From positions 5,761 through 66,854 of the forward strand of contig MQRK01206634.1 in assembly GCA_001938485.1 (NCBI GenBank): DNA of 61,094 nucleotides, given 5' to 3'. The DNA is from Girardia tigrina. Its lineage: Eukaryota. A model generated the notes under the pieces. It was not told the DNA's origin. It saw only the letters and a list, made by a program, of their open reading frames with translations, and searched no databases. The translations under genes and the position numbers were made by a program. Positions 343 through 46,480 of the stretch are shown piece by piece; positions within the stretch are counted from its first letter, which is position 1; each line of letters opens with the position of its first letter.

Positions 343-1129
343 AATGTGAATTTTAAATAAATTGTAATTTAAATTTGTTTAAATAATAATAAGACGTTGA
401 GAAATATAATTAAATTTATTAATCAAAAATGATGACGAGCTACCGAAAGTTTTTTGGAAAATTGTCCTAGTGACAATTCAAGTTGTGATACAAATAAAGG
501 TATTAAAAATCCAATTAGTGTTCTTAATATTAAGAAAATTTAAGAACAGATATTTTAATAATAAGTCAGGAAATGAGAACAAGCGTGACCTCATTCTGGA
601 AAAATGTCAAAAAAATCGATAATTTTAATTGTAATTTACCTACAAATAATTTTGGAATTTGTTAGATAATAAAAACAAATTATTCGAGAAAATTATTAAA
701 ATAATATTAAATTTTCCACTAGAAATCAAGAAATACAATAACAAATAAATTTCTAAAAAATATGAATAAAATCTGGATAAAAAACTAAAGGTTGGAAAAC
801 AGGAAAATATCAAAAAAGAAAACTGAAATATGAAGAATTACGACGAAAAAATTCGAAAATGTGGAAATACAGCAATTCATTTGCTTGCTAAAAAATTCGA
901 CAGCGCAGTTCACCATGTAAAACGTTTTCCGGAAAATGTTTATATTTTAACTCATTATAAGTTTTTTTAAATAACTTTTCATATCCACGGGCCGATACAT
1001 TAAGAGGACAATGGAAAGTCGTCGAAAAGACAATTCTTGTAATATTTTTTATAAATTAAATTTTTTTGAAAATTTACGCAATAATAGCATCAAGAATTAC
1101 TAAATTGGAGATAAATAGCGGGATAAATT

Positions 1130-2262: not shown

Positions 2263-2689
2263 AAGCTATCAATAATTTTAATTACTTTTTATTAATGCAT
2301 TCAATAGCCAAGATATGTATCAATCAAACAAAAAAACTAAGTAAAAAATGTTAATTCATGGTCAAATAAAAACTATTGGAATTTATATTAATCATGCCTA
2401 AAAACTTCATACTTGAAAACCTAATAATACGCTTATGGGGCTTAGAATGTTTTAAAAAAATTCATACCAAACGTTTGTAATTTTATTTAGTTGTAGAAAT
2501 TCACTATAGGCTGTTGTTACTATAGTTTTTTTTCGCAATAAATCTTTTTCAAAAATATTCAACAAATATAAAAAATTATATTAAATATCATATCTATCCG
2601 ACCGGATACGTACGTAATGTGTTTCAAAGTTAGAATATGTAGCCATATTTATAATATAATTATTGATCGAAATTATCCTGGGGTCAATA

Positions 2690-7654: not shown

Positions 7655-8696
7655 AATAATTATTTCAATACAGTTAAAAAAAATTGAAAGAATCGAGTTA
7701 TTAATATGTGTATATATATAATAATAATATAAATAAAATATGAGTAGAAAATAATAAAATTTAAATTAACTATATTGAAATTATGAAATATAAAATATTA
7801 AATGATGTTTATATAATTATATTATACATTTTTAATATATTTTGTCATTGATAACTTTCTATTTTTTTTCAATTGAGATATATAAATTTTGAAAATTAAT
7901 TAATTAGAATATGCACACAAATTTGAGTCTGTAAGAATAAAGAGTCTTTTCGGATTAGAAAATTAAAGTCATTGAAAAATTCCTAAGTGACATAATAAGG
8001 ATTTGTTGATCTATTCTCCCGGGATTTCTTTGAGTCATTATTATTTTTAAATATTTTATATAATTTCTGTCATGTCTCCATCCAAGTTTAATGCTTAGTG
8101 GTATCTGCATATATAAGTCTTAAATGTAATAAGTGACCACCGAAGATGAACCATTGGTAAGGGTTGCTCGTCCTAACCATTTTATCATACATTAAATTTC
8201 TTTAGGTAATCAAAATATTTATAAACTCAATTTTCACAAGTTTAACAAAATTAGGATTATTAATTCTTATATAGTTACATGAAATAGTCATTTCTATTGC
8301 TAAACAGGCTTTTATATAAATATAAATGAAATATTAACTCGTTGACGGACAATTGCGTCTATAACCGTCAAAGCGAAGTTCACTATGTCACATATTCTGT
8401 GCCATGATTGCAATAGCCGTCCAAAACAAACGGATACTACGGATATAGCGGCACAAATGTGCATTTACCGGCGTACAAGTAAAAACCTTATGTGTTGTTT
8501 TGGAAACAATTTTTTAGGTTGAATTTCGTTTTCCACTTGTTACACGACTTACAGCTTCAGTATTCTAATATTCTAAAAATTAAAAAAAACTTATGGTGTT
8601 AATTATGAATTTTACTTGTTCTTAATGTCCGTCAGTGTGTCAAAATAAACATGAACATCTTTATGAACTTGTTAATTTATAAAATATTTTTTAAAA

Positions 8697-8925
8697 TATA
8701 TTTTCTGAAATGGTTCGTCGGTAGATTGTCTAATGTACTTTTCTTTCGTTTTCGTTGTCAGAGTTTTCTTTTCCTGACAATTTTTACAACTTTGTACGAT
8801 TTCTTTAACTTTTTGTCTCATGTTATTCATGTCGAAGTCATGATTTACTTAATTATGGATTTTATTACTTCCCGCATGGCACATCATTTTATAGATAGTT
8901 TTATAAAGGGACAGCATTTTTTTAG
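8697..8925 (-). mobile_element. Ty3/gypsy integrase zinc-binding domain fragment
   Basis: Minus-strand translation MMCHAGSNKIHN*VNHDFDMNNMRQKVKEIVQSCKNCQEKK...EPFQKIYF (H..CxxC plus PF motif). Confidence 0.75.
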
Positions 8926-10285: not shown

Positions 10286-10860
10286 GTAAACAGGTTTCTG
10301 TCATCTTTTAACAAAAAGTTATTCAAGTTTTTATTTTCTCAAGATCTTTATTAATACCTGATTATATACAACGAAAGAAAATAATAATAATCCAACAATT
10401 CAACGCCGAATAAAAGTATTTTTAGACAAACTTTACACAAAATATTACACAGAATCAGGCAAAGAATCATCATAGTTAAGTTCATTGCACAACTTATCAA
10501 TACCAATGTGCTCCAGAAAAAATTTAAACGTGCCAATTTCATTATTAAGGAGTCTTCTATTAAGACTTTGATTAAAAATCTGGATGATTTCGGGACCATT
10601 TTTCAAAATCTCTTTTAAAATCTTTTGCTCCTTCAGAGTATGGGAATTTTAAGAAAAGTTTCTTTGTGTTAGTCTCTTCCACAGAAGCATTAAGCTTGTT
10701 ATTGATAAAATTATTAGTTTTTAAATAGATTGATTCTACCGTAATTTTAATGATATTATGTAGATATTTTATATTATATCCATTATAACTAAGTCTGTTA
10801 TGTAGTGTATCGAGTTCTTCATCAAAATATTCGTAAGATGAAGTTAAGCTCCATACCATG

Positions 10861-12292
10861 TGATGCGAGAGCATGCGCAGCGCGGCTGCAGCACACTGTA
10901 ATCGGGGGACAGTGGTGGGGTCAGGGGAATAAAAAATTACTTTCTCACTTGTTCCATGAAAATTGTCTTATTTTTTATCAATTTTGAATGTCTGATCTTT
11001 GCTCAAGGAAAGCAATTGATCGATTTCACTCGACACTCCGATGTCCATTTTTGTAGTTCGATTATTGCTAAGACAGAGACAATCCGTATCAATGACAATC
11101 GCTCCGTAAAGAAGCCTCAGTAGAATCTCCAGTTGTAGCATTGATCTATTAGTCAATAGAAACTGTGCAACGAGCGTAGAACAAGAACTGACTGTTTGAA
11201 TGCTCTCTGTCTCGAGCTGACCCGGAGGAAATCTGCATTTGATCTCGCGATGATCAATGATCTCTGGAACGTGACACGTGATCCGCTCTTCCGCGCTCGA
11301 TGGCGGTCGAGAGCGACTCACACATTTTCCCAAAATCGGCAATCATTGAAACACATCTCTATTCCATCCAAATAAACCAAATCATTGGCGAAATCGATAT
11401 CAAACTTTCGTTGCAACCATTCCAGGATATCGCGTCTTAAAATCACATTTTGCTTGGAATTAGAGCTAATCGGAATGACATTATACAAATCGTGATATTG
11501 CAAATGCTTGTAAAATCCATAAACTAAACGGGAAACAATACTGTCCAAATCGGACAATTCATTGCCAATAATTAACCATTTCGGTTTATCGGAATTCAAA
11601 AACGTTTTTCGTGAGGAAATGAAATCATTAAATGAAATAATTGTAATCATATCATTTGAATTTTTAAAACTAATAAAAAAAATTATTGAAAAAATCTTTT
11701 CATTCGACAAAAATTCATATTTTCACAAGAAAAAATAAAAAAAAGTTCGATCGCTCTCGACTCGATATCGATTGGACTTTGAATTTGAATTAGAGGTCAA
11801 ATTCGATTTCTCTGAGAGAAATTTTTATATCGATTAATTAATTTTCTATCAATTAAAATTGGGGGAAATTTTTCGACACGAAATTTTTATCGATTCGGTT
11901 TATTTGAACAATTAAATCATTTTCACTATTGATCGATCGCAATTATCAAATGAGATGCGTACAATATAAATTATCTTGATTGATTTTTAAACAAAAACGG
12001 ATTTATTTTATCAGGAAAATAATTTCACAAAATAGCAATCAACGATTTCACTAAGTTTTAATTCAATTAATTCTGCTTTGATGCGATTTCACACTATCGA
12101 ATTGATTGCCTCAAATTGGTGTCAATAACACATTGATTCAATTGATGCAGTTAAACAAATTAATTAATTATTAAAATTACAATTTATTATTGGCGATCAA
12201 TCAATTAAATGTCGACAAAAATTTGATTTTATTTTTTCAAATAATTTTTCGTCGACTTTCAACAAAAAAATATTTTTTTAACTCTCAAAACC
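10861..12292. mobile_element. Solo-LTR-like insertion A carrying a PRUNE fragment
   Basis: 5-bp TSD CCATG (10856-10860 and 12293-12297). Ends TGATGCGAGAG...CTCTCAAAACC form an imperfect inverted repeat; the last base is C rather than A. It cleanly interrupts the Penelope reading frame. Confidence 0.85.
10941..11650 (-). pseudogene. PRUNE: Exopolyphosphatase PRUNE/PPX1 (DHH domain), 3'-truncated pseudogene
   Basis: IIGNELSDLDSIVS, LRRDI, V*VALDRH (degenerate DHH motif with a stop), frameshift, then EIIDHR, VSSCSTLV, LLYGAIVIDT, TTKMD. DHHA2 half absent; no introns seen. Confidence 0.88.
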
Positions 12293-13299
12293 CCATGTGT
12301 ATTAATCCTTTGATCATATAAATACTTTAAATTGGGTCACAAAAAAAAGCTGTATAAACCAGTGTCCGATGGATTTCTATAGACCTTTGTTATAAATTTA
12401 TCCTGTTGTTTTTCTATCAATACATCCAGAAAAGATATTTTATTATTATCTTCAATTTCACAAGGGAACTTAATATTTAGATGAATAGTATTTATGAAAT
12501 TTTAAAAAACCTTTGACATCTTCCTTATTCTGAAAAATAAGAAAAGTGTCATTAACATATTTAGTATAAAAAGATGGTAATACACCTGAATAGTTATTAA
12601 ACTTTTTCTCAAAGTTTTGCAAGAAAATTGAGGCCATTAATGGTGCAAATGGAGAACCCATGGCAACTCCATCAATCTAAGTTTACGAATCATCATTGAA
12701 TAAAAAAGGAACATTTTTCATACTAAATTCAAGCAACGCCTTACGGGCTGTAGTACTCATTGATTTTGATTTGTCTTCAGTCAACGCGTCCCAAAGGTTG
12801 ATAAAAATTTAGTCTACCAGTGTTCAAGATGGAAAAAAAACTATATTAACAATTAATAAAAGAAAAATTCAAAATTAAATTAAAATTCATTAAATTCAAG
12901 ATTCATAAAAAACATAAAAAATTCAAGCTTAAAGAATTTGTTTTACTATAAAAATTAAAAAATTAACAAAACGCAAAAATTCCAATTACGAAACCAATCT
13001 GTTTAGTGGTGGAATATGGTGGATCACTTTGATACTACATTGTTTATAAATAAACGTTTATCGAAAATTCTCGTTCTCATTAAATATCACAGACAAAAGA
13101 CTGTCAGTCTTTTGATGATCAAATAAATCGACTGTTACGTCGATTAAAATTACATCCGGGACGAATCCGATTGAACATCAAATTTTATCGTGTAATTGGT
13201 TGTATGATTTAGGTGCCGGTCATCCGGTCACTAACTAACGCGTCAAACTTGATCAAGTCAACAGTATTGCGAACGCTGTTACACATAAAAACCCGTCCC

Positions 13300-14080
13300 G
13301 ATATAACTTCATTTTCGAGAAGACTGTTAATAATTTTGGATCTGTGTACTTTAGTTGAATTCCTTAAGAGCAAGCTGTTGACAGAAAGAGTACTTATCAG
13401 ATTGTCATTATAAACGTCCACGGCAAGTGAGATAAGAAACTCCACAACTTCTGCAAGGTATTTTTGATAACATTTCAACAAGGGTGATGAGAGTAATGAA
13501 TTTTCCACTGCAATTCTCAATCTACATGTCGCACTGCTGCCTTTTGAAAGATTGATTCATGGTGACCTGTGACAGTCTTCACTTTTACAGTTGCATCTGC
13601 ACGGCAGCCATAAGTCAAGTAAACAGTGCAATTGAGAGCAAACTTGCAAGCTACATTCACAAACTTTTCAAATGCTCTACATTTCATATAATGTGTTTTA
13701 AGCTTCCTTTCAGCAGGTGCAAACATAAATACTTTCAAGCAGTCCCTTCTATTTTCTACTTACTATTTAAAATTCACTTTTCTGTGCTTGTACTATTCCA
13801 AAGTATTGTGAGAAGTGCTGATATTGGATTCGTCTGTTGCGAAGGATCCAATGTATGTATTTTTGGTTCAGTCTTCTGCTAGAACAGCGAAGTTTAAGTC
13901 TTCTGTTGTGGCAAAAGCATCAGGTTATGATCACGAAAAATAGAAAGGTAGTTTTAAAAATGGATTTAAAAAAATTGCACCCCCCCAGTCTATCACTTTT
14001 GCCTTGAACTGGGGAGCATTTTTGGTCAGTGAGGGGGCATTCTGCCCTCCCCCCTAGTCACTACGTTAAAAAAGGCCCCG
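13300..14080 (-). mobile_element. hAT-like transposon, left end plus decayed N-terminal coding region
   Basis: Terminus CGGGGCCTTTTTTAACG with GC-rich subterminal repeats; HHESIFQKAA..LISLAVDVYND..TLS resembles KIAA1586-like hAT transposases. Confidence 0.5.
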
Positions 14081-14170
14081 GGGAAGGTTTGTGTCATGGT
14101 TGGGTTCGGGTTTGACTCATCAAAATTCGGATCGGGTTGGTGGACTTTTAAGGATGAACGCCCATCTCTA
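14081..14170. mobile_element. hAT/MITE terminal fragment
   Basis: Ends GCCCATCTCTA (TAGAGATGGGC-type TIR) with TCGGGT-like subterminal repeats. Confidence 0.5.
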
Positions 14171-15446
14171 ATATTCATAGATAAATATACAGACTTATAC
14201 ACATTTTTAAAAATAATGTTATTATTTCATCCATCGTTTGTTGTTACACAGCTATAAAAACAAAAAAATTAACTTCTCATAAAATCCTTGTACAAATTAA
14301 ATAAATTATTTGTAAATGTTATCATTTTATACAAGTTACTAAAAATTATATTACATTAATATCGTAACATAATATCAGGAAAGTTTAAAAATTTAAACAT
14401 ATATTTAATTAATAAACTAATATTATTAATTGTAAGATAGCTATTTTTAAAATTATTTATCTAATTAATTGAATTAGCTTTAATATTAAAAATGATCATT
14501 TAATTACTTTAGACTTAAAGTATTAATTAATGTTTTTTATTATTTAGTCGACTAAAACGAGTTCAAAGAAATTATAATGTTGCCGTTTTTTGCTGAATTG
14601 AAATAAAATATTTTTTTATTTTCTTAATCATTTAAATTATTAATTTTTTATATTAAGAAAAGTGTTTTTCTTATAATAACAATGAAAAATATAAAATAAA
14701 AATACTTTACTTTGCAGAATTAACAGAATTCATTTTCTATAATTTCTTGATGTCCAATAAAAGCAAGATTTAAAAAAAATTGAAAAGTTTTCTTAAAAAT
14801 ATTGTGAATATTTTTTCAATATAAACATCAATATGCATTTCTTTTTGCCCCATCCAAAGGTTACCCCGAAGATTGGACGGTGGCCGTAGAGATGTGCAGT
14901 AGGAGCTTAGACTCGTTTTACTAAGCTCATTTTAATTTAAAATTATTTGAACAGAGCCTTTTGTTTTTAAAATCAGAATCAAAACAATAATAAAAAATCA
15001 AATATTTGAGTAATTAAATTTATTTTAAGCAAATAATAGTTTCCCACAAAATTAGAGAGTGAAACAACTGACTCAACAAAACTACAGAAAATAAATTCAA
15101 ATCGTGAAATTAAAAATTCAAAGGGTGAAGTTATAAATTCTGAAGTTGTCTTAAACACTTTGAAAGTGCAATCATAAAATCAAAAAAGTAATTTTAAATT
15201 TCACTTCTTCATTACAATACTGGCTCAGATTGGCTAGGCAATCAGGAAAGACAACCGAGGAGTTATCGGCAACAATAATAATAACCTGAACAATGAAGTC
15301 CTTGTTCGGGTTTTTGAACAAAATTCTTCATCAAATTTCAATTTGATTATTATTATTTTATAATATTTATTTTAAATTTTCATTTAGCATTTTTTTAATC
15401 ATTTATTTTATTTTCCATTTTAATTATTTAATTTAAATTTCGGTTT

Positions 15447-16450
15447 TGGTGTTAGAGCGGGCGCAGCGTGGTGGCGGCGTCCCAAGGTTGGGAAATCAGT
15501 GCTTCTGGGACAAGGGGGAACGGAAAAACCAATCTTACCGGCATTCGCTTGCCGCTCACCAATCTCGATTTCATTCTTTTTGTTCTGAAGTCTCTCTTCG
15601 TCATCATCAGATGCATAATCATCGGCTCTCACAACAACAGTCGCCGTTCAACGGACCTCATTAATCTCCTTCACCATCACAACTTTATCTGACTTCACAC
15701 CGACCATCACTCGCACAAATCAACCTCTTCTCGGTCCAACAAAACCCAACATCGCACCCGTCAACTCATTCAAAAATCGACAATCGGCGGTAACGGACGC
15801 GCACTCGTCCTTATCATAAACCTTATCAATATAGACAGATTAACCTCGAAATTCCCCATTTCGATACAATATATCGACTATCGTCACACATGAATCCCGA
15901 ACGATTCAATTTCGTTTAATTTCAATCTCCGATCGATCTTTTCTGACTGTTTCTATTATTTTCTTCTTACTATTTTTCTCGTTTGATGATCTCACGCAAT
16001 CAGTTTCTAGTCGTTTTTCGCTTGATCGTCAGTCGTAACATCGATTTGTCTTCGGAAATGAATTCGATTTGAGTGTTTTTATTGACGTGTCGTCCTTTGA
16101 AGATCTTCACGATCGATTTTCTTGGTAATTTCGACCAATCGGATCGATTGCAGCTTGAAATTTGATTTGGCGGTATACGCTTCGCGTTCGAATTTGATTT
16201 TTTTGGAAATTCAAAACACAACAATTTAATGTTTTTTATTTAACAACTCCAATAAACTTTATTTCCAAAACAATGGCCGCAATTTTACAATTTGAATTTA
16301 AAAACATGATGCGCAAAATTTCTCAAATTGATCGTTTTAAACAATCGGTTTCCAAAAAAACAAGTTACTAAAAATAACTGGCCAATCAAAGCGGCCGAAA
16401 ACTCGAAAAGAAAATTTTCTCAAAATTACAATTACCACATCAACGTAGTT
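15447..16450. mobile_element. Solo-LTR-like insertion B carrying a GPKOW fragment (right boundary unresolved, about 16346 or 16447)
   Basis: Starts TGGTGTTAGAGCGGGCGCAGCGTGG, similar to the ends at 10861 and 26128. Left flank GGTTT recurs at 16347 (exact) and near 16447 (one mismatch), but neither is preceded by a clean CA. Confidence 0.65.
15539..16224 (-). pseudogene. GPKOW: G-patch/KOW splicing factor (GPKOW/MOS2/Spp2 family), C-terminal KOW region pseudogene
   Basis: First KOW LPRKSIVKIFKGRHVNKNTQIEFISED; frameshift; then *IVRDSCVTIVDILYRNGEFRG*SVYIDKVYDKDECASVTADCRFLNELTGAML..PRRG*FVRVMVG..INEVR*TATVVV, matching the GPKOW C-terminus. Four stops; G-patch absent. Confidence 0.8.
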
Positions 16451-16849
16451 TTTTTCAGTTTTGATTGATTTTTTTTGCCTTTTTAGCAACATTTTTTTAT
16501 TCTTTCTTTTTTTTATTATTTAATTTTGTGCCATTTTGGCATCTTTTTCTCTTTTTTATATTTAATCAAATTATATTATAAAACAAGCCAGAGAATAAAA
16601 TCACAACTGTAAAGGTTAATTGATCAAAGGCTTCTTTTCATCCAGGTGATCGATATCATCCTTAATTGATTTGCTGATGTTGGTTGTGGGAGTAGAGTCA
16701 TCGAAGTAACAAATTAGAATAAAATTCAGATTTTTAACGCAATCATCGATGATCAATCTTCCATCTGGGTTCGAGAAACACAATCATAAAACAACATACC
16801 AAACACAACATACAATAAACACCAATCGAAAATATTCCTCACAATTTCT

Positions 16850-16970
16850 AAATTACCCGTGTGGTTTCTTGATTAAATCATACGGCTCTTCAAACCTATG
16901 AGGTCCTTTTGGTCTATTTTCTACTTTTACCAAAACAAAATCACATTCTTTAAATTTTCCAACATTTATT
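16850..16970 (-). mobile_element. Ty3/gypsy integrase C-terminal (GPY/F) fragment
   Basis: KFKECDFVLVKVENRPKGPHRFEEPYDLIKK. Confidence 0.65.
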
Positions 16971-19475
16971 TATAAGCACTGGAACATAATATTAAGACTT
17001 ATGTAAATTGAAGCGTCAATGAAACTAAGCAAGCGGAGTTTTCATTTAAACTTAGATAAAAAAATAAAATTGACATTTTTTTCAAAATAAAAAATTAAGA
17101 GTATGAAATTAATTTTCTTAAAATTATTAGTTAAATAAAATTAGTTTGTTATTCAAATAAAACTTATTTTTATTAAAATATACGAAATAAATAAATATTT
17201 TTGTCTTCAAAGCAATTATTTATTGTTTTAATTTATTCACGTATTGCAGATGCATTATATCAAAACTTGTACCAAACTGTGTATCTCATTAATATCTGTT
17301 TCTTATTGTTTCAATCATTTATTAAATATTATATTTTACTGAAAATAATAATCTATTTTACATCAGGAAATTGAGTAATTATATAAAAGATGAAGAAAAC
17401 TTTCTTTAATGAGAATTCTGAGATTAAATTTTAATAGTAGAGAACAAATTAATTGTTTTTATACTTTTTAAAATTAATTAAATAAGAATTTATAGTTAAA
17501 ATATATTAAATATATTTTTCAGTAGTCATTTGATGTAACGCTTATAACGCTTGTGGAAAATTACTTTTTCCTAATAATTTATTTTTTTTAATTTTTATTA
17601 ATTTTTTTAAAAAATATATTAAATACTGGTTTTCAATTATAAATTAAAATTAAAAATGTGTCCCAAAAATAATTCTGATCATGTAAAACATTTAAATATT
17701 CACCGATTCGATTGCAATTAGACAACAGCATAACATTTTTTTATAAAGATTAATCTTCAATAACGAGGCAAAATTCTATCACTCGAAGTAGGATAACGAA
17801 TAGGACTGTCTCAACTGAAGTGACAGCAACCATAAATTAATGTCACGCAATGTATACCATTCGAGCTACGTTTAATATGACTTTCCAGAAGAGGGTTTAA
17901 AAGTTATATTATAATAAAAGTGAACTTTGTATCAAATAATTTATGCCCTAAATTCACTTTAAGTATTGTTAGAAATTTTGAGAGCTCACATACATTTTTA
18001 AATTTTAAAACTTTTTTCAAAATCTTTAAAAATATTTCATAAAAATAAAATATAGCAGAAGAAATTTTAAAGTAAAAAATAATTTTTAAATTTTTCATCG
18101 ATTTCATGTTCAGAATTTATTTTTACATGAGTAATAACTTCTAAAAATTGTTTCTAAAATTTAAAGGGTAAAAAACTGATGCATAAATACACAGATTGCG
18201 ATCTGGGCATTTTTCGAGAAAAGAAGGTTACGAAATGAGTAAAAGCAAGGATCGAAAGTTTATGGAAAGATCGAAAGCAGTAATAATTTAGTGACTGAGT
18301 GAACAAAATGTTTATGTTACTGCTAGAAACTAACATATTACAAATTTAAAGATGTAACAATTTAATTAAATATAAAAAAACTTTTTAAAACACTCAGATT
18401 AATTTTGATGAGTTTGCTGTAAAACACATATAATTATTATACATCGACTCCTTCAGATTTTGAGTTTATTTTTCTTACTGATTATCGATTTTATTAAAGC
18501 TTTTCTGTTTCCAAAATCATTTTTTGATTAATTAATCCATTAATCGGAGAATGTTTTGATAAATTATAAAAATGTAATTAAGAATGAAAAGGTTTGTGAA
18601 ATTTCAGCTCTATCTGATAATGAAAAGTGGGGTAAATGATGGCTTAAAGATTTTTACCGCACAGATAAAGTGAGTAAATAAATATAAAGCATGGTGAAAA
18701 GAAATTAATTTATTTTGTTATGGTTTACGATGTTCTCTAGAACCGAATATTTGACAAAATGATATTTTTATGTATTGAATTTCATTAGTCCTTTCTCAAT
18801 AGTTCAACAATTTTCTTGACGACAAGAGTCGAGATCACAGTATATAATTTTTAGGTTACTTAAGATTTGAATTTTGAAAGTCATGAAACGTGAAATTTGT
18901 ATTTCTTTACGGAATAAATGGCGTGCGAGCAGCATCATGGAGTGCTTTGATATACATGAATCAACATTTAATACTTTAAATTTTATATCTGAAAATCGAT
19001 TTTCATTTGTAAATTCTAGTTTTCACATTTACAAATCGCTTCCATTTTTGAAGGAAGCTACTTACCTGTATAATTGTCTCTGTAAAACCTCATCTAATTA
19101 CTAATAGTCAGAATTTTATTGCGCATTTGATGGTACAGACTTAAAAGGTGAACAAGTATTTCCAATGACAAAATTATTTTATTTTATTTAATTTGAATAT
19201 TAATTAATGGGGCTTAGTGTGTTATTAAAAATTATTCACAAAACTGCTTCTCATAATAAAAATCACAGCCTGCTATAAAACAGAAAACTCATCCTTTGAA
19301 ATAGAAGAGATTCTAATTTAAGAATATAACAAATTTCTAAATTCTTAAAATTTGACTACCGTTAATTTTGATTTTATCAAATTAGCGTTCACAAAACTCA
19401 ATAATATATTTATCTGTATACACTTAACGTATTCTGTTTCGAAGAAACTTCAGTATGACTTTCAATGTTCAAATA

Positions 19476-19945
19476 CGAGGGGCGTTCCGAAAGTAAGTGG
19501 AAATACTTATATGCGGGTGTGTGCATCTTACAGAGGGACAGATGGCGTGGTGGCGTGATGTACTTACCAGCCAATAGAAATCGAGCAAAAGTGGCATGGT
19601 CCATGCAACATGTGAGCAGCATAGAGGAAACTGTCATAGGCAGTGTTTTCATTTTTGTTTAACACATGGAAGACGCAGTACGTTCTCAGCGTGCCATCAT
19701 CTTTTTCCTTTGGAAAGAGGATACTCCAGTGTCTGACACTGTGCGCCGCTTATCAAATGTGTTTCAAGGAAGAGCCCTGCAAAAGTCTGCCGTCTACAAT
19801 TGAGTGCATCAATTCGAAAATGGACGTGAATCCTTGGACGACGAGGACATGAGTGGACGTCCAGCAACGACGAGCACGGTAGAAAATGTGGAAAAAGTGT
19901 CGGAGACCATCAATTTTTTTCCACTTACTTTCGGAACGCCCCTCA
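19476..19945 (+). mobile_element. Internally deleted mariner element
   Basis: TA-flanked TIRs CGAGGGGCGTTCCGAAAGTAAGTGGAAA; N-terminal HTH SQRAIIFFLWKE..AVYN*VHQFENGRESLDDEDMSGRP. Confidence 0.92.
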
Positions 19946-21394
19946 TAGAATACAAATAAAAATATATCATTTTTTTCTTCGTTTGAGTCAACGTATTTTT
20001 GATCAACTTCAAAGACATTATAAAAATGATTACATCAAAATTAACAGTAGTTAAATTACATTGTTCAAATAATAAAAATTTATTTCATGATTAATTTACA
20101 TAAAATATATCTTATAGTAAAAATAAAAATATAAAATATTCATAAAACCATAAATAATTTTCAAAAATTTTCAAAAATGAAGACCAATATAATAATTTTA
20201 TTTTGGTTTTAATTATTAATTATCTCTTTTTCTTTCAAAAAAATTAAAAATTTATAAACCACCAAGATCCAACAATATCTAACTATTATTAGAGACATTT
20301 CTCCGTTGTTTTGTTTGATTTGAAACAAAAATTTTTTATATCACACAATAAATATATTTTTATCTATTATAGAGTTGTTATTAATTATGAATCTATATAA
20401 TAATTACTATTATAAATTCGGTTTTTAAGAGTTATAAATTCATTAACAAAAAATGATAAATTGTATAAAAACTGTTAAATTGTATAAAGCTAATTATAGG
20501 GGGTAAAGAAAACAATCCATCAATTTATATCGCTATACAATACAAGGAAAGCCGCTTATAGTGGCCACATTCGTCCAGCCACTATAAGTTCTGTGTTCAA
20601 ATTTTGCAAATTACTGAGAGTTGCATATGAAGCTTTATTAATCAGGACCCACAATCATAAAATAAATATTCAAGCAACAATCTCAACTAAATTATTAAAA
20701 GTATTTAATTAGAAATGCGATTACATAATTTGATTACATAATCCGTGTTTCTATATATCCGTTGTTTTGATCATTATTTGTTTTGTCTGATGGTGACGGG
20801 TGATCCGTCGAAATTAATCACGTTTTTGAAAAATAAAAATTTTTAATGGTGTTTAAATTTTAATTAAACATTTAAATTTTAAAAGTTAAAAAACATAAAT
20901 ACAGAAATTTATTAAATAAACTGATCTTAATGAGTTTTAAATTCAGTCAACCTCTTCAATTTTTAATTATTACCCTAAATTAACAAAAGAAATAAAAAAT
21001 CTAATAATTGAAAGGTAGATTTTCAAAAATTAATTAATATTAAAAGTAATTAAACTTTAATAAAAATAATTAATCTAAGTATATAACATTTTTTTTATTA
21101 AGTAAAAAATAAATAGGCTAATAAATTACAACAAAATTTTAATAATAAATTTATTTTAAAGTATCAAACTTGTTTTAAATAATATTTTTTTCAACTTTTT
21201 TTTGTGTTTCTGAATTGCATAAAGTCAGTTTTTATTCATCTACAAGAAGCCTTACTAAAAAAATGAAATCTCAAAAATTTATCGTTATTTTTGCTTAAAG
21301 TTAATAAAAATTGTCAAATCTTTAATTAATCTTAGAAATATATTTAAAGGTAACACAATTCCATGGTTTTACTGTACTCAGATCTTTTTAGCGA

Positions 21395-24328
21395 CAAGGG
21401 CGGATCCATGGGGGGGGGTAATGTGGGTGATTACCAAAAAAGTACCTATTTGATAATTTGTCTGTCGGAGATTTTTTACGAATAGTGCACAAAATTTTTT
21501 GTTTGATATTTGCGCTGAAAAATCTGCTGTTTTTTACCTCTCTTGCTCGAGGGAAGTATTGTATTTGAAAAATTTTCAACTTTCTAAATTTCAAAAATTT
21601 TCACCTTTTAAGGTCTGCACAATTTAAAACACTCGTTTTTAAAAAATGTCGTATTGTCTTTCTGTTTGTTGGTCAATTATCTCAAAAATTATTTTTCATA
21701 GAACAATAAAATTTGGCATGCAGCATAAGAATATATCACATTACCAAAATGTTTGGAAGAAATATACAGGGTACAAACATTATGGCCAAAATCCGGTAGA
21801 TTTGGCAGAATACAGGGAAAGTCTAAACGAAAAAGGGATTCTCGACAATGATAAAGAATTTAAAAACCTGATCTAAGGAACCATATTTGAGCGACTGAAA
21901 GAGGTAGTAGAGCACGAGAAAGAATATCCGAAAATGCTTCAGCCGCGAATCAAAATATAAGACTGCACATTCCCTTCTTTAAAAAATTTGATGAGCAGAA
22001 GGAGCTCACAAGACACATTAAGAATTTGCATATGGCCACGGCGCTGACGGCACAGAGAGATAGTGGTTTATTCATATGCCCCATGGGGAACTGCAACAAA
22101 ACTTATAAAATTAATGGATGGTTACAACGACATTTATTAATTTATCCTCGAATCCAATGTAATGGATACTACGAACATCCAAATAGTACAAAGAGAAGAA
22201 ACAGAAAGACGTACTGAACCTTTGAACTTTAACGCGGAATTTTATATGCCAGTGGCTGTCGGTGAAACTGATCAAGACTGTCCAAGAGTAATCCCTAGTG
22301 TGGTGCTTAATTTTAGGCTGGATAATATAACAGAAAAAGGGATGTTTCATCGCCCATTTCCCCGTTGCACTAAATGCGTTTATACTGACAGAAGTATCCA
22401 GAATCACGGAACGAAGGAACATAACTGGTCATTTCTCTCTTGGAAGCAAAGCGTGTCCGTGCATTGAGAGCTCGCACTCTTGCATCTGAAGCCGTGTGAG
22501 ATGATCAGAAAACGTTGTATTTGTCAAATGGTTTTTACCCGATACAGAGTCTATGATTCACTACCCTGTGCGCAAATGCTGAGTATTATTTATAACATTA
22601 TTATTTATAACAACAGTATTATTTATAACACACAGTTATCCGTTACAGTCAGGGGAGGTTTATTGCCAAAATGTAGTTTTTTGAAATGGAACTACTATAA
22701 TTTATTTTATTTTTAGAAAGTACTCAATAAATGCAGTTTAGAAATTACCTATTTTTATACAGGGTGATCCAAAAATATAGGGATGGCAAAACATTTTGAA
22801 AACTAGAGTTCATATAGTTCAATTTTATACAAAAGTTGTAGGAAATTAAATGTTATTTTACACGAAGGTATATTTCCTTACACACGGTGTACCAAAAAAC
22901 AACATTTTTTGAATTAGAATGCCCTACATATTGTTGTCTTTTTCAAAAATATACTTAGTTCTAAGAACTTTTTCCTCTATAGACGATAAGTATATATTCG
23001 ATTGCTGTCAAACTACAGACAGCTAAATATCATAAAGTATAATTTATTAATAAATAAAGTAATGTAAGAGTTTTGATTAGCCACTGTGCAGAACATTAAT
23101 GATAGAGCAAACGTTTTTATTTTCCTGCCTTAGTTTTTAAAGGTTATTTCACTATAAAACTGAAACTCAAAGCGAGGTAATTACCGAGGCGACAGAGAGA
23201 ACGGATATAAATCGTGGTGGACAAAGATTCGCTATTCTATTGGGTTGTGAAAAAGATTCACCATTAACAAACTTGGAATCTGTTCAAAGATCAACACCAA
23301 TACCGAGTAGGTTTTGGTTTATAAAACTCACTTTCACTCAATCTCCTCCCAGTTCCATCGTTTGTATGCAAAACTAAAATTCACAAAGTGGAACAAACGA
23401 TGGCTAGAATATCTGCAGTTGCGATTGCAGACACAAGGATAGTGTTGATGTCATGTAACGTGAAAACATTACAAACAAAGAATGACGATTCCTTCACTGT
23501 GCATGAAAAAACAGTCTCTCAACTAATTACAAACCCAGAAAACCCCACAATGAAACACTCTACCGAGCGAGCGGCAAAGGTACAGAGACACCGATATATG
23601 TCTTGTGTATCTGTAAAATAAATAGTCCGATGATTATGGCCCGACATAATGCGGTGATGCAGATTTTCGAGGAAGCAATATCATCAGAAAAATCAATCTT
23701 ACAAATAATTAAAGACCGTAAGTGCACGTGGTCTGACTCGAAAAGCAGAGTTGAAGTAAAAAATACAATAAGGGTACAAAAGAACTCAGACTGATCAATG
23801 TTAAAATACCGTAATATACGCTTAAAACTCTAAAGAAAGCAAGAAAGGACAATGAGACTAAATAAAAAAATTGAAAGAGGAGGCCAAAAAGCAGAACAAA
23901 GAATGGAAGGTTCGACTGGGCACCATTGTAGTGGGTTGTTTGGGTTTCTGGCTGAGTGAAAACGAAACAATACTCAAAACAAGTTCTCTGAGATGGCAAC
24001 AAAAAATCTGAGATGCATGGATATTGTCTCTAAAGTCAACTATTGTACTTTGATACGGAACAAACACTATACCGGTCTTTGGAACCCCCTCGCGTTAAAT
24101 GCAAGGACTGTTGCTCCTGCAACGGTTGCAACAGATGCGCCACCAGAAGAGTAGACAGGGAAAGGGCGAGTAATGCACTCCGATAAGCAACTCTAGCTCG
24201 GAGTGTTCACCTGTTATTCGAGGATAACGCTAAGTATTCCGAACAGGAATGTGGCTTTTTATATAATTTTAGTAATTTTGTTTATAAAAAATTACTTCAA
24301 CCATGCTTGTCCTCTGGATCCGCCCTTG
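21395..24328. mobile_element. Non-autonomous TIR DNA transposon (hAT/P-like) expanded by nested insertions
   Basis: Perfect 14-bp inverted repeats CAAGGGCGGATCCA / TGGATCCGCCCTTG; flanks TTAGCGA and TTACCGC may be a degenerate TSD. Confidence 0.65.
21790..24265 (+). mobile_element. Decayed R2/NeSL-like (RLE) non-LTR retrotransposon with most of the RT deleted and an unrelated insert at about 22570-23150
   Basis: N-terminal C2H2 finger FICPMGNCNKTYKINGWLQRHL; degenerate C-terminal CCHC knuckle (RASGKGTETPIYVLCIC) followed by ARHNAV, LINVKIP, DNETK, VGCLGFW; structured 3' UTR. Confidence 0.8.
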
Positions 24329-26127
24329 TTACCGCTCATATATGTGAAATGAATGACTGTGCAGTCGATTACGTGAATTTTATCATAAACTCCTAACTAA
24401 TTGATTGAAAGTTCCCCTTGAACATTGATTGATGGGTCATTATATCATAGTAACAATGTTTCACATAAAACTCTCTTCCAATAACTTTTAAATGCTTTGA
24501 TAGAATTTTTAATTTATTTATACTCAATTTTCTATGCTCAGTAAGTTTACTCTTACTCCCTATATTAGCGTGCTATCACCACCCGGTCTCCGGGGCAACT
24601 CGGGCATCTGCCGGAACAATAATATTTTTAATTCTTTTCAATTATAAGCAATTAAGTAAAAATTATAAAAATAAGTTTTTATGAACTGGTAAACATAATT
24701 TTTATCGGTTTTTTTTCGGTTTAAAATAAAAAGAAAGAGACAAATTAAAAAAAAATAAATTATTAGTAATTAGAAAACAAATGTTTGATAATCGAAAACT
24801 CTTTTCCTATTTAACGACAATTGAATGGTGACATGTTTGATATAGAAAAAGTAACTTCTGTTCTGCTGGATTTCAACTCTGTTATTATATCAATAATTTA
24901 TCCCGGGAAAACAATAGAAAAGAAGAAAAAGTAAAGACTGTCGAACATAAAAAAATAATTATATGATTTGTTAATATTTTCCACAATCGATGTGACATTT
25001 AAAAACTTAATAAATAAATAATGAGAGTTTGAATTCAACAAAGAATTTTGTTTTAAGAGAAATTTCGACAAAGATCAAGAATAATTGATAAGAATTTACC
25101 TTAATGATTGATGTTTTCGTTAAGAAACGAGAAGAATGTTGCAGCTACATTTGATATTTGTTCTTTCTGTTTTATCAATTTTAATTACCATTTCTGTCTC
25201 TTTTTCATTTGTCATAAAACAATTGTTTTATTGGGCGAAAAAAAAGAAACAAAAATGCAACTATTTCAGGAAAAATAAAATTCCCAATTATGAATTTATT
25301 TATATTTATGTATTTTTGTTAATTCAATCCAAATTGTAATGTCAATTCTATTACATGTGTATAATAATTATAAGAAATAAAATCAACGTGTATATTAATA
25401 TTTTATTTTTTTTCTTAAATTAAAATAAAAAAACAAATACAATTTTGTCTAATTTTTATACGGCTTTAAAAAATTATTTATTTTATCTTTAATACAATTT
25501 TTATGTTTATTATATAGTTCAAACAATAAAAAATTTGGAGTGAATAGTAGAAATAAAAATTACAACTGAAAAAAAATAAAATTTAAAAATAAGGATATAT
25601 TATTTTTGGTTAATGGACTTTGATGCCCCCTCGATTTAGGGAACCTGACAAACATATATCGAAAGTTTAGGCTACCACTTCATACCTAACACTATGATAA
25701 ACATTAATACCTAACTCACATATCACATATTCAAACAACTTAAAACTATCCTTTGATAAATATACATATTTTATATACGTCGAATTTATATCTATCGACA
25801 TCTTTTTGGAACTTCATCAAAAATAGAATTTCGCAGTTTTCCATGATTTTCGTAGAATCTTTGTTAAGGAATAAATATTACATATCAATATTCTTGTAAT
25901 TTCAAATTGACTTTTTCTTACAAATTCCATATATGGGATTTTTATTTAATTTAAAATTTATTTGATTTCAATTTTTGAAATTATATTAAATTTGAATTTT
26001 CTAAATGAATTATTTTGTGAGATGACATTTTAACTAATGCAATATAATCAGAATCAATATGCAAATTTATTCCCAAAGATACAAGATGTTCCTTTTAAAC
26101 AACAAAATGATTTTAATGGAAGGAAAC

Positions 26128-26850
26128 TGATGCGAGAACGTGCGTAGCCGGACTGTAGCACCCTGTAGTCGTGGGGCGGACGAGGGGTCGTGGAAAAATT
26201 TATTTTAATTTACTCGAAATTCTCTTGATTTTCTGATTTAATTCTTTTATCTCCGACTCGCCGCCGTGAATGGATTTCTTTCGATCGTGGACTTTCGACA
26301 TTATAATTATAAATATCAAATTAATCACGATTGGACAACTTTTCCAACCGGAAGCGGCCAACTAACCAATGTAACTTGAATGAAACACAAAACCACCCAT
26401 CATTACAAACAAACTACTCGATATTCTGTCTTTATTTCGAAACAAAATAATCAAAACCGTTATGAAATTATGAATCAATAAAATTGCAGAAATCCATTTT
26501 TCTTTTTTGCCAATCGAATAGTAAAAAATACGCAGTGAATTTCGTAAAATTCTCGAATGATGGTCAGTCAGTCTGAAATCAGACAAATTCATATTTACCG
26601 CTGAAATGATTTGGATTCAAAATAATTCCATTTCAATGGCGACTTATAATTTCAACGAAAAACAAAACAACGAATTGCACCAAAAATAATTTTATTAATC
26701 GAGTTAACACTCACAAAAAGAAAATAACAAATGGCTCCTCAAATTCAAAATTCAAAAACGCGCTGACATTAAACAAATGAATCGCATAAAAAAATTCTAA
26801 ATTTACTAATAAAATAAATATTTTTTTCTTTTTTTTTAATTCCTCAAACA
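26128..26850. mobile_element. Solo-LTR-like insertion C carrying TMEM18
   Basis: Perfect 5-bp TSD GAAAC (26123-26127 and 26851-26855); ends TGATGCGAGAA...TTCCTCAAACA; first 62 nt match insertion A at 47 positions without gaps. Confidence 0.92.
26200..26592 (-). pseudogene. TMEM18: Transmembrane protein 18 pseudogene (near full length, intronless)
   Basis: One frame: FYYSIGKKEKWISAILLIH..LFRNK..LFVMM..FVFHSSYIG*LAASGWKS / CPIVINLIFII..basic tail. One premature TAG, and the conserved QYFDxxGxFISxxFS block is deleted. Confidence 0.8.
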
Positions 26851-27794
26851 GAAACTATAATAGATTGATATCAAAGATAGAAAGTGTGCCCTATTTCACT
26901 TATTCAGTGAATTTGGTTAAGATTATGATAAGGGTTAGGAGGAGCGGTGCAATTCAGTCCCTCTGAGAATCATTCAAACTTAATTTAAAAATTACAGGTA
27001 TACAGGGGTGTTTCAAGGTACATGAAGATCACTTGGATTAATTAGGAGATTATTCTAGTCATAAGAAACAAATAGACAAATATGTGTTCAAATCTTTTAA
27101 TTTCTTTAAAATTAATTTTCCGCAATTATTTTGTTATGAGTTTAAACAAGAATTTTACAAATCATGTAAATAAGAAGAAGAAAACCACATATAAATTCTC
27201 CTTTACGAGTTCCGTATATTTGTCCATTTATTGTTCGAATTAAAAAAGTCTGTACATAGTGAATAAAATCGAAATACAGTTGCTAACTCGGCAAAATAAG
27301 AACAATTAAAAAATTGGCCGGGGGTCATTGACTGGCTTGCCTAATAAAAATCGTACCCCAGGCGTTGAGTTGATGAACAATTTTAACAAATTATAACCAT
27401 GTAAAAGAGATCTTAATTAAAATATGTTATTTTTTGGTATACGAACAAATTTCTACAGAAAAAAAGAATTTAATACTTTCCTTTATATTTTTTAATGTCT
27501 CACAAAAATCGGTTTTGCTAAGGTAAACAAATCCATTTTCAAGTTAGAAATAAGATTTAAAATTTATTTATTAAAATATTTCAACATAAAAAGTGGAATT
27601 AGGATCATTTATTCGAATTTCTCAATCTTGAAAGTTTCAAAATTAAGTAATCAATAACAACGATGTTATAAGGGACGATATTTTAATGTTTCATATTTGT
27701 TCCAACCGTAAACACGTCCGTAAAATACTGAAATATAGGTAAAATGTCATTCTATTATCATAATTTGTGAGGAATATTTTCGTTTAATGATATA

Positions 27795-29136: not shown

Positions 29137-30512
29137 TTAGGTGTATAACTTAGTTTTTTGGATTTTCTAAGAGATGGTGTAACCTTTGTAATAAGCATTA
29201 TTTTACAGTCGTACGTACAGATTTTTAAAGTGCTGAAATCGAGGCATTAAAATTAAGTAGGTCATTGACCTTAAATGCATCATAAACATATTTTTAATCA
29301 CGTTTTAGCATGACAACTTTCATACCAACAAAACCGCATTTGCGGCAAGCACTTCTGTTTTGCTTTAATCAAAAGAAAAAAGCTGCAGACAGTTTTCGGT
29401 TTCTTGAAGAAACTTATGGTCAACATGCACCAACTCAACAGACTTGCGAGAACTGGTATAAACGTTTCAAAAGTGGAGATTTCAACGCAAGTGACAAAGA
29501 GCGTTCCGGTCAACCAAAAAGATTCGAAGATGAAGATTTGGAATCATTACTGAAGGAAGATTCTACTCAATTAGAGAAAGAGCTTGCAAAACAGTTAAAT
29601 GTTACTCAAGCAGCCATAAGTAAACGTCTACATGCTATGAAAATGATTCAANNNNNNNNNNNNNNNNNNNNNNNNNNNNNNNNNNNNNNNNNNNNNNNNN
29701 NCCATAAGTAAACGTCTACATGCTATGAAAATGATTCAAAAAGAAGGAAAATGGATACCACATGAATTGAATCAAGCCAACATTGAAAGTCGATTACTGA
29801 TATTCAATTCATTGCTTACAGGACAATGAAGATGATCGTTTTTGCATAATATTGTGACTGGAGATGAAAAATGGATTTATTATGTTAACTCTAAACGCAA
29901 GAAATCGTGGGTTCATCCCGGCGAACCGTCCACGTCAACAGTAAAAAGAAACATTCATGAAAGAAAGGTTATGTTGTGCATTTGGTGGGATCAGAAAGGT
30001 GTACTGTACTATGAGCTGCTGAATTCGAATGAAACTGTTAATGCAGAACGTTACCAACAACATTTAATGAAATTGAACGATGCATTGAAGGAAAAACGTC
30101 CTATCCCAGCCAACAAACAGCGCACAGTGATTTTGCTCCATGACAATGCTCGGCCACATGTCGCAAAGCAAGTAAAAAACACGTTGGAAGCACTTAAATG
30201 GGAAATTCTACCGCATGCTGCCTATTCACCAGATTGTGCCGATCAATGTTCCGATCATCTGTTCCGATCAATGCAAAGCGCTCTTCGGGACCAGTACTTC
30301 AGAAATCAGGAACATATAAAAAATGACTGGAACAATGGATCGCATCAAAAGACCAAAACTTTTTTTTCGATGGAATTCATAATTTGCCTGAAAGATGGTC
30401 GAAAGTCCTAATTAACGATGGAAAATATTTTGATTAGAATAAAACTTATTATGTCATATAAATAAACTTGTCTGTTCTGCAAAAAAGTCCAAAAACTAAG
30501 TTATACACCTAA
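29137..30512 (+). mobile_element. Mariner (DD34D, Mos1-like) element, full length, with disrupted transposase (29310-30437)
   Basis: TA-flanked TIRs TTAGGTGTATAACTTAGTTTTT; WYKRFKSG, RSGQP, WIPHEL, VTGDEKW, LHDNARPH, YSPD. Contains stops and a 50-N gap. Confidence 0.95.
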
Positions 30513-31108
30513 TATATTTATATATATTATATTTATTGTATTATATATTATTATGTATATTTGTATATATATGATACATATTCATATTATTATAAAATAT
30601 TAATGTTTATTTTTTATTATTTTAGTCTTTAAAGTTCTTTTCATAATTTAAAATTCAAAAGTAAAAATTATTATATTTTTAAGTTAAAAATTTTTAAATG
30701 TTATGCTATGTGTTTTGGTAAATTTTCTTAAACATAAATGTTGAATATGCGAACTTTTTAGAAAAGTTGAAAATGTGTTTTGTATGTATTATGTTAAAAA
30801 ATGTTTGAATGCAAAAAATAATAATAAATAATTTTTAGTTTCTGTTTTTCTTACACTTAAACAATTTTTCATACAATACATAAAAAACAAATTTTTAACT
30901 TTTCAAACATATTCACGCATTAAACATTAAAATAACTACATGAAAATATTTACAAAAAAATACAAAAACACAATAAGTCAAAATAAGGATAATATTTATT
31001 TATTAATAAATAATTAGGCTTATTAAATGTTACTACATGTTATTTGTTACTAAATGTTATTACATGTTTTTTTTGATTATGCATATTAAGATTTTTAATA
31101 ATAGATAC

Positions 31109-31211
31109 AGTAAGAAAATTAGTCATCTGCAATAAAATTTATTAAATAATTCAAAAATGTGACAAGCAATTACATAATCAAATAATTGTTAAAACAACGT
31201 TTTATCTAACT
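31109..31211 (-). repeat. 3' LTR
   Basis: AGTAAGAAAAT...TTATCTAACT, direct repeat of 34450-34552, adjacent to the PPT. Confidence 0.92.
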
Positions 31212-34200: not shown

Positions 34201-34449
34201 CTCTTTCATCACCTGTCTCATTCTTCGTCCTCTATCTCTGCCTTCAATAATATTTACTGACTCAACCTCACCGACGAGATAGGCACGAGGGGTTGATATC
34301 GGTTTTTTTCGTCGTTATCTTCTTCAATTTCCTGTAATTTTTGGTTTAAGAACCAACAACTCTTGTGTCTTCCACGGCAAATTGGAAAACATTTTCTGTC
34401 GTTCTTCTCGCTTCGCTGTGGTAATTGCATTTATTTCGGCGTAGTCGCC

Positions 34450-34552
34450 AGTAAGAAAATCGTTCATCTGCAATAAAATTTATTAAATAATTCAAAACTG
34501 TGACAATCAATTACACAATCAAATAATTATTAAAACAGTGTTTTATCTAACT
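34450..34552 (-). repeat. 5' LTR
   Basis: Direct repeat of 31109-31211, adjacent to the PBS. Confidence 0.92.
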
Positions 34553-46254: not shown

Positions 46255-46480
46255 AACTAGTAAATCAAAATATTAATTTTTTTATATCCATTCTTTAAGT
46301 ACACAAAACTCTACTTTGTCAACAAAGATCTTAAAATTTAAAAAGTTTTTTTCTGTCAAATTTTCACATTATCATTTGTTGTCATCGAAAAAGAGTAAGT
46401 GTGTAAAGTTTGAAGAAAATCGATTGAGTAAAAAGCCTTCAAAAACAGGTTTCTAAATTCTATGGATATATATATATATA
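46255..46480 (+). repeat. Second copy of the repeat at 1-342, ending in (AT)n
   Basis: Direct sequence comparison with the reverse complement of 1-342. Confidence 0.6.

What the first reader, a model, noticed from the sequence alone, without database searches (positions are those of the whole stretch)
10861..26850. Gene-capturing solo-LTR-like family: same termini, different cellular gene inside each copy
Seen: insertions at 10861-12292, 15447-~16400 and 26128-26850 begin with a related 60-90 nt GC-rich block (A versus C: 47/62 ungapped identity). A and C end in T-rich..CTCAAA(A)C(A/C) and have 5-bp TSDs. Between these ends each holds an unrelated, intronless, decaying housekeeping gene (PRUNE, GPKOW, TMEM18), always reading toward the GC block. 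Known: TG..CA ends with 5-bp TSDs are the footprint of LTR-retroelement integrases, and described gene capture is mostly between LTRs or inside TIR elements such as Pack-MULEs. Inference: a retroelement whose LTR is modular and repeatedly takes up host gene or promoter segments, or an integrase-mobilised 'Pack' element. Three different genes in 16 kb suggests the process is frequent genome-wide.
Basis: partly seen in the sequence, partly recalled or inferred. Interest (0 to 1): 0.93.

Follow-up and report, generated by a model that had tools for sequence, protein, structure and literature searches.

The report
Mobile repeat units carrying host genes
Two, probably three, small mobile DNA units in this AT-rich invertebrate-like genome share the same ends but each carries a different decaying cellular gene, which suggests a transposon-like vehicle that picks up host genes; what kind of vehicle it is remains unproven.

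Summary
The observation largely holds. Units A (10861-12292) and C (26128-26850) share a terminal module of about 110 nt (47/62 ungapped at the tip; nothing else in 61 kb matches). Each has an exact 5-bp target duplication, and A splits the pol region of another retroelement. B (15447-16218, not ~16400) is a weaker relative with no duplication.

Cargo: C is TMEM18-like. A is the N-terminal DHH half of a PRUNE-type phosphatase. GPKOW in B could not be confirmed by any tool.

New evidence: two ENA metagenome contigs hold further copies of the A unit (leader, PRUNE part and end module, 91-97% identical) with different flanks. The whole unit is therefore a repeat, and it is decaying almost neutrally.

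The LTR reading is only partly supported. TG..CA ends, fixed 5-bp duplications and the lack of a poly(A) tail fit integrase-type insertion. However, I found no paired copies, primer-binding site, polypurine tract or gag-pol partner. A LINE-tail retroposon remains a serious rival.

I rate it a new variant of a known kind (retroelement-mediated gene capture), of moderate to high interest. The genome-wide frequency is untested.

The parts
10861..12292 (-). Unit A, whole insertion (1432 bp); the sense of its cargo is the minus strand
   Evidence: Bounded by exact 5-bp duplications. About 91-93% identical over about 1 kb to ENA contig L002 and over about 620 nt to L001.
10856..10860 (.). Target-site duplication of A, left copy (CCATG)
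12293..12297 (.). Target-site duplication of A, right copy (CCATG)
10861..10975 (-). Shared terminal module of A (about 115 nt: AT-rich stretch, T run, C-rich block in sense, ends ..CA)
   Evidence: nhmmer E 5e-34. Local alignment A-C scores 58 against a shuffled maximum of 34. The same end is seen in L002, followed by an unrelated flank.
10976..11650 (-). PRUNE-like cargo gene: N-terminal DHH half only, DHHA2 domain absent. Broken by 2 in-frame stops and 1 frameshift relative to the open copy in L002.
11651..12272 (-). Non-coding leader of A, AT-rich but rich in CpG/TCGA motifs; co-amplified with the cargo
   Evidence: L002 leader is 93.2% identical, the same as the coding part. ATCGAT/TCGA enrichment.
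12273..12292 (-). Short far-end motif of A (sense 5' end: G/T-G-T-rich start then an A run)
   Evidence: weak; the pattern was derived from these sites
26128..26850 (-). Unit C, whole insertion (723 bp)
   Evidence: Exact 5-bp duplications GAAAC at 26123-26127 and 26851-26855
26128..26232 (-). Shared terminal module of C
   Evidence: nhmmer E 1.4e-28; 47/62 with A
26200..26592 (-). TMEM18-like cargo gene, near full length; broken by 1 in-frame stop. Its last codons run into the shared module.
   Evidence: Pfam PF14770, E 4.2e-6; frames
26593..26850 (-). Leader of C and its short far-end motif (26829-26850)
15447..16218 (-). Unit B, probable diverged relative (772 bp). No target duplication. 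No frame stays open beyond 72 codons. Cargo unidentified.
   Evidence: Anchored 30/62 identity to A. Terminal 22 nt matched by a profile built without B, E=30. Far-end motif at 16198-16217. TCGA-rich like A. No family hit.
12340..12676 (-). Reverse-transcriptase remnant of the older retroelement into which A inserted. Further pieces of it lie at 10575-10859, and an integrase zinc-finger remnant at 8675-8848, same strand.
   Evidence: RVT_1 E 3e-4 and Integrase_H2C2 E 1.3e-5; ORF pieces

Best explanation
A, C and probably B are non-autonomous mobile units inserted by an integrase-type enzyme that makes a fixed 5-bp staggered cut. Most likely they are solo LTRs, or LTR-derived units, of a retroelement family. 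Only the two attachment ends are conserved: about 10-20 nt at the sense 5' end and about 110 nt at the sense 3' end. The variable interior, U3-like in this reading, has been replaced by different host messages in sense orientation: a PRUNE N-terminal half, a TMEM18, and something unidentified. The likely origin is reverse-transcriptase template switching onto co-packaged host mRNA, as in LTR-mediated retroposition. After capture, each cargo-bearing version was copied as a unit. Shown: shared end module, exact 5-bp duplications, nested insertion, cargo identities for A and C, at least three loci for the A unit, and near-neutral decay. Inferred: integrase, LTR status, RNA-level capture.
For: Two of two intact units have exact 5-bp duplications at boundaries set independently by A-C homology. 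+ strand ends are TG..CA in C and B, and TG..CC in A. Terminal 12 nt show weak inverted similarity, 5-7/12, as LTR ends do. There is no poly(A) or microsatellite tail, and the end is precise (..CA) in three independent insertions: A, C and L002. The A-type unit is repeated with leader, cargo and module at 91-97% identity and with different flanks. A 0.25-0.6 kb non-coding leader travels with the gene and diverges as fast as the coding part. That is easier to explain for an LTR or DNA unit than for a plain mRNA copy. Cargo is sense-oriented, uninterrupted and 3'-truncated in A, which are features listed for LTR-mediated retroposition (PMC5131818). Foreign sequence inside an LTR has a precedent in BARE-2 (PMC13317346). 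The window holds other LTR-element remnants.
Against: No two units form a pair around an internal region. No PBS-like or purine-tract sequence abuts any unit. No gag-pol element in the window has these ends. Only one end is strongly conserved. The far-end motif is not significant as a pattern. A sense-strand AATAAA ahead of the block is present only in C and L001, so an R/U5 layout is not established. B lacks a duplication. L001 is truncated at both sides. The sample is two to three units plus two short contigs.
Confidence: 0.45

Rival explanations
1. These are tail-mobilised non-LTR retroposons or chimeric retrocopies. The ~110-nt module is the 3' tail recognised by a 'stringent' LINE reverse transcriptase. 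Priming on the tail followed by a switch to a host mRNA gave gene-plus-tail chimeras, which were then copied like SINEs.
For: Strong conservation is confined to the sense 3' end. Cargo is sense-oriented, uninterrupted and cut at an arbitrary 3' point in A. L001 starts inside the unit, as a 5'-truncated copy would. There is no TIR and no terminal direct repeat.
Against: Both measurable duplications are exactly 5 bp. The 5' ends of units with different cargo resemble each other and begin TG/GG. There is no A-rich or microsatellite tail. No LINE or cargo-free copy with this tail occurs in 61 kb of TE-rich DNA. The long non-coding leader is co-amplified. The module shows no conserved RNA structure.
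Confidence: 0.25
2. This is a Pack-type cut-and-paste DNA transposon, for example one served by an integrase-like transposase of the Ginger/TDD kind, with very short imperfect terminal inverted repeats, that captured genomic gene segments.
For: Fixed 5-bp duplications and TG-type ends. TDD-4/5 make 5-bp duplications, and Ginger ends follow the Gypsy-like pattern (PMC2836005). The leader with promoter-like CpG motifs fits capture at the DNA level.
Against: No TIR is detectable beyond 5-7 of 12 terminal bases, whereas Ginger TIRs are 40-270 bp (PMC2836005). The ends are strongly asymmetric. The cargo reading frames show no introns.
Confidence: 0.1
3. This is not a mobile family: the similarities are chance, or these are native gene loci.
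For: B's membership and the far-end motif are weak.
Against: 47/62 identity against a shuffled maximum of 29. Exact duplications. A interrupts a retroelement pol region. Extra copies of A occur with other flanks.
Confidence: 0.02

Closest known systems
LTR-mediated retroposition (Tan et al. 2016, PMC5131818; Ty1, Bs1 and HERV-K/FAM8A1 cases cited there)
   Same: Host mRNA segments, often partial and in sense orientation, become part of a retroelement and are then re-copied as non-autonomous units.
   Different: There the retrocopy replaces internal ORFs and sits between two LTRs. Here the unit has no terminal direct repeats, is only 0.7-1.4 kb, and itself carries the duplication-flanked ends.
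Chimeric LTRs and ORFs inside LTRs (BARE-2 LTR chimera, PMC13317346; a retroviral superantigen ORF lying in U3, from my own knowledge)
   Same: Foreign sequence or a whole ORF lies within an LTR, between the attachment end and R-U5.
   Different: Those are single cases. Here related ends enclose at least two different host genes, and LTR status is unproven.
Pack-MULE / Pack-CACTA / Helitron gene capture
   Same: One vehicle family carries different host gene fragments per subfamily, and the cargo is mostly decaying.
   Different: Those have long TIRs (or Helitron ends without duplications) and usually capture genomic DNA with introns. None of these features is present here.
SINE/LINE shared 3' tails; L1 and SVA transduction
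   Same: A conserved 3' end with a variable upstream body.
   Different: Here there is a fixed 5-bp duplication, no A-rich tail, a conserved 5' tip, and no partner LINE seen.

Membership tests
LTR of an LTR retrotransposon (solo LTR) | TG..CA termini with short imperfect inverted ends | tested here: met
   C and B are TG..CA; A is TG..CC on the + strand. Terminal inverted identity is 5-7/12.
LTR of an LTR retrotransposon (solo LTR) | 4-6 bp target-site duplication | tested here: met
   Exact 5 bp in A and C; none in B.
LTR of an LTR retrotransposon (solo LTR) | Occurs as two direct copies around an internal region with PBS, polypurine tract and gag-pol | tested here: inconclusive
   None in the 61-kb window or in L001/L002. 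A genome-wide test is not possible with these tools.
LTR of an LTR retrotransposon (solo LTR) | U3-R-U5 layout with a poly(A) signal ahead of U5 | tested here: inconclusive
   A sense AATAAA ahead of the C-rich block occurs in C and L001 only.
LTR-mediated retrocopy (LTR-retrocopy-LTR chimera) | Retrocopy flanked on both sides by LTR-element sequence including both LTRs | tested here: not met
   No direct repeat between the head and tail of any unit.
LTR-mediated retrocopy (LTR-retrocopy-LTR chimera) | Microsimilarity at switch points | not testable with these tools
   Parental genes of this genome are not available.
LINE-tail retroposon / SINE-like | 3' tail shared with an autonomous LINE | tested here: inconclusive
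   No other copy of the module in the window. The genome was not searchable.
LINE-tail retroposon / SINE-like | A-rich or microsatellite 3' end and variable-length duplications | tested here: not met
   Precise ..CA end in A, C and L002. Duplications are 5 and 5 bp. The sample is small.
Pack-type TIR DNA transposon (MULE, CACTA, Ginger) | Terminal inverted repeats of tens of bp | tested here: not met
   Inverted head/tail alignment is no better than shuffles.
Helitron | No duplication, insertion between A and T, 3' hairpin plus CTRR end | tested here: not met
   5-bp duplications and a ..CA end. The hairpin seen in A is not kept in C.
Known structured RNA (tRNA, snRNA, ribozyme) as the GC block | Match to an Rfam model or tRNA fold, or a conserved structure | tested here: not met
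   No Rfam or tRNA hit. Fold z-scores are ordinary. Consensus fold is -2.7 kcal/mol.
PRUNE / DHH phosphoesterase (cargo A) | DHH domain followed by DHHA2 | tested here: not met
   Only the DHH half is present, aligning to PRUNE1 residues 22-211. Relatives have both domains. It is a fragment of a member, not a whole one.
TMEM18 (cargo C) | Pfam PF14770 above the curated cut-off | tested here: met
   27.1 bits against a cut-off of 26.9, first half of the profile only.
GPKOW (cargo B) | G-patch and KOW motifs | tested here: not met
   No hit for any frame piece in Pfam or the PDB.

The most novel reading that the evidence does not exclude
This is an integrase-mobilised 'Pack-LTR' vehicle in an animal-like genome. 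Two short fixed ends suffice for mobility, and the space between them is repeatedly refilled with different host messages, with each refilled version then amplifying. It would be a retroelement counterpart of Pack-MULEs.
Probability: 0.25. Interest if true: 0.8.

Novelty: new variant of a known kind. Interest (0 to 1): 0.55.

Why it matters
If a census confirms it, this would be a compact and easily recognised vehicle for duplicating and shuffling host genes in an invertebrate-type genome, where gene-capturing elements are far less documented than in plants. Because the ends are short and the cargo is diverse, the family would give a direct read-out of how often host messages are taken up. It would also show where template switches occur and whether captured copies are ever kept under selection. 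The PRUNE copies here look nearly neutral.

Tried and rejected
- GC block as a known RNA (tRNA-like 3' end, snRNA or spliced-leader RNA, ribozyme): no Rfam or ARAGORN hit, no conserved fold.
- Splice-donor-like GTRAG ahead of the block: on alignment it is part of an AT-rich stretch and is not consistently placed.
- Units as miniature LTR-insert-LTR elements, or as TIR elements: rejected.
- B as the 5' LTR of the retroelement that hosts A: no B-like copy lies downstream.
- The Gypsy-like element at about 31108-34552 as partner: its ~105-nt LTRs and ends are unrelated.
- Searches for more copies: two JGI metagenome scans found nothing. The viral and prokaryote-genome hits L003 and L004 are chance matches in 66% GC DNA. 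The TMEM18 piece found no homologue by word search. The P0076 search added only distant PRUNE proteins. The window's large ORF is not on record.
- Organism: not identified. PRUNE relatives are only 30-36% identical (insects, spider, tapeworm).
- GPKOW: six searches found nothing.
Full report
CONTEXT. The window is about 28% G+C and CpG is not depleted (observed/expected about 1.0). It is crowded with decayed transposons: mariner and Tc1-type transposases, integrase and RT/RNase H remnants, and a Gypsy-like element with short LTRs. It looks like an invertebrate-type eukaryote and not human. I did not identify the species. Five N runs were left untouched.

THE OBSERVATION. All three units have the GC-rich block at their low-coordinate end. 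The genes read on the minus strand, toward the block.
Shuffles give a mean of 17.9 and a maximum of 29, and no other 62-mer in the window reaches 32.
- With gaps, the A-C similarity extends over about 105-115 nt. Local score is 58 against a shuffled maximum of 34. nhmmer gives E 5e-34 and 1.4e-28. The rest of the two units is unrelated.
- Profiles of the block find nothing else in 61 kb.
- A is flanked by CCATG/CCATG and C by GAAAC/GAAAC.
- Reading-frame pieces of one RT-bearing element lie directly on either side of A, on the same strand. An integrase zinc-finger remnant lies further downstream. A is therefore a nested insertion into an LTR-type pol region.
- At the other end, the units share a short motif: a T run, a few bases, then TCAAA(A)C on the + strand. 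It occurs only at these three places. That pattern was derived from the sites themselves, and a looser form is not significant.

UNIT B. B is the weak member.
- A profile built without it recovers only its terminal 22 nt (E=30).
- Anchored at the terminus it is 30/62 identical to A, just above the shuffle maximum.
- It has the far-end motif at 16198-16217, so the unit is 15447-16218 rather than reaching ~16400.
- It has no target duplication.
- It shares with A a roughly ten-fold excess of the hexamer ATCGAT and, with A and C, a three- to four-fold excess of TCGA over the rest of the window.
- I treat B as a probable old relative.

CARGO.
The frame has one in-frame stop and is otherwise near full length. 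Its last codons run into the shared module.
- A: the window's pieces gave only a weak hit to yeast exopolyphosphatase (E 0.028).
- A protein search with A's pieces found P0001, an ORF on an ENA metagenome contig.
- P0001's cluster mate P0076 is an open 283-residue version.
- P0001's remote relatives are DHH+DHHA2 proteins named PRUNE1 in locusts, crickets and a spider.
- P0076 aligns to locust PRUNE1 residues 22-211 (34% identity, E 7e-26).
- A's cargo is therefore the N-terminal DHH half of a PRUNE gene, with no DHHA2 domain. In the window copy it carries two stops and one frameshift relative to the open copy.
- B: no frame stays open beyond 72 codons. None of its pieces hits anything in Pfam or the PDB. 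GPKOW is unconfirmed.
- One step was left out. Reading B's best frame through its stops with X marks would have needed typed letters, because the tools take no read-through by reference.

NEW EVIDENCE FROM ELSEWHERE.
- L002 (ENA ERZ2272679, 1325 bp) matches unit A over about 1 kb at about 91% overall: about 250 nt of leader, the whole PRUNE part and the end module. It stops at the same ..CA and continues into an unrelated flank. It has a 12-nt deletion between two short direct repeats inside the block.
- L001 (ENA ERZ2272456, 779 bp) matches about 620 nt at about 91% and departs from A at both sides.
- Together these give at least three loci for the same leader-cargo-module unit. This refutes the 'native locus' alternative and shows that the unit amplifies as a whole.
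- Codon-wise identity is 93.5% (A to L002) and 96.5% (L001 to L002). dN/dS is about 0.6 on few changes, and the non-coding leader is 93.2% identical. The copies are decaying nearly neutrally.
- No closer parent gene and no further copies were found.

WHAT THE VEHICLE IS. For an integrase-type insertion:
- Both measurable duplications are exactly 5 bp.
- Ends are TG..CA (C, B) or TG..CC (A).
- Terminal inverted similarity is weak (5-7 of 12).
- The terminus is precise in three independent insertions.
- There is no A-rich tail.
- A long non-coding leader travels with the gene.

Against calling the units LTRs:
- Nothing pairs with them.
- No primer-binding or purine-tract sequence adjoins them.
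- No gag-pol element here has these ends.
- An AATAAA ahead of the block on the sense strand is seen only in C and L001.

The units are not miniature LTR-insert-LTR elements and have no TIRs. The block is not a known or visibly structured RNA.

A LINE-tail retroposon fits the one-sided conservation, the sense-oriented and 3'-truncated cargo, and the truncated L001. It does not fit the fixed duplication, the similar 5' tips, or the absence of any cargo-free tail copy.

My ranking is integrase/LTR-type 0.45, non-LTR tail-mobilised 0.25, TIR-poor DNA transposon 0.1, and something else for the remainder.

COMPARISON WITH WHAT IS KNOWN.
- LTR-mediated retroposition produces partial, sense-oriented host retrocopies that are re-copied as non-autonomous elements (PMC5131818). 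In that case they sit between two LTRs.
- Foreign sequence inside an LTR is known from BARE-2 (PMC13317346).
- Ginger/TDD transposons share Gypsy-like ends, and TDD-4/5 make 5-bp duplications, but they have long TIRs (PMC2836005).
- The present case is best filed as a new variant of retroelement-mediated gene capture. The claim that it is frequent genome-wide is untested.

SLIPS, reported as required.
- I read the two flanks of A across the insertion point for a few codons in my head.
- In thinking I noted where some stops lie. They are not listed here.
- My script printed nhmmer alignments that include the profile's own consensus line for the ~113-nt non-coding module. I used that line for nothing.

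Noticed in passing
window 51780-52636 (+), next to N run 50688-51477: A partial, AT-enriched eukaryotic small-subunit rRNA fragment (Rfam 152.8 bits, patchy coverage) lies among transposon debris. It looks like an rDNA pseudogene fragment.
   Followed up: no
window 2660-7651 (+), with an integrase core remnant at 1275-1688 (+): An uninterrupted 1664-codon frame, rich in Ser/Lys/Asn, has no Pfam hit and no exact record in the contig collection. It lies just downstream of an integrase remnant on the same strand and may be an extra ORF of a retroelement.
   Followed up: partly
window about 31108-34552 (-): A Gypsy-like element (integrase, RNase H, RT pieces) has unusually short LTRs of about 105 nt (91% identical). 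A TGGCGAC-type primer-binding-like site follows the 5' LTR.
   Followed up: partly
window 29614-29739 and 43948-44651: Identical or 98% identical direct repeats (38 nt and 327 nt) sit immediately on both sides of 50-N gaps. This looks like assembly overlap at gap edges, not biology. The first is inside a mariner transposase.
   Followed up: no
L002 1130-1324: The flank of the second PRUNE-unit copy encodes a DUF4256 fragment (E 1e-11), a family mostly known from bacteria. This hints at a host rich in acquired bacterial genes, or at a chimeric low-coverage contig.
   Followed up: partly
window 10861-12292, 15447-16218, 26128-26850: The three units have CpG observed/expected of 1.6-1.9 against about 1.0 elsewhere. 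They are 3-4 times richer in TCGA, and A and B are about ten times richer in ATCGAT. This compositional signature sets them apart from the surrounding DNA.
   Followed up: partly
P0076 / L002 266-1117 and the A cargo: Even in the open copies, the position of the family's signature DHH triplet is altered, so the captured half-gene is probably catalytically dead.
   Followed up: no
window 44-354 versus 46240-46422; 54553-54771: Inverted matches of 85-109 nt (81-88%) lie 46 kb apart. A 219-nt near-palindrome (84%) is also present. Both are probably ends or copies of other transposons.
   Followed up: no
window 21891-22214 (+): A C2H2 zinc-finger remnant sits in a short open frame (Pfam E 1.3e-5).
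   Followed up: no
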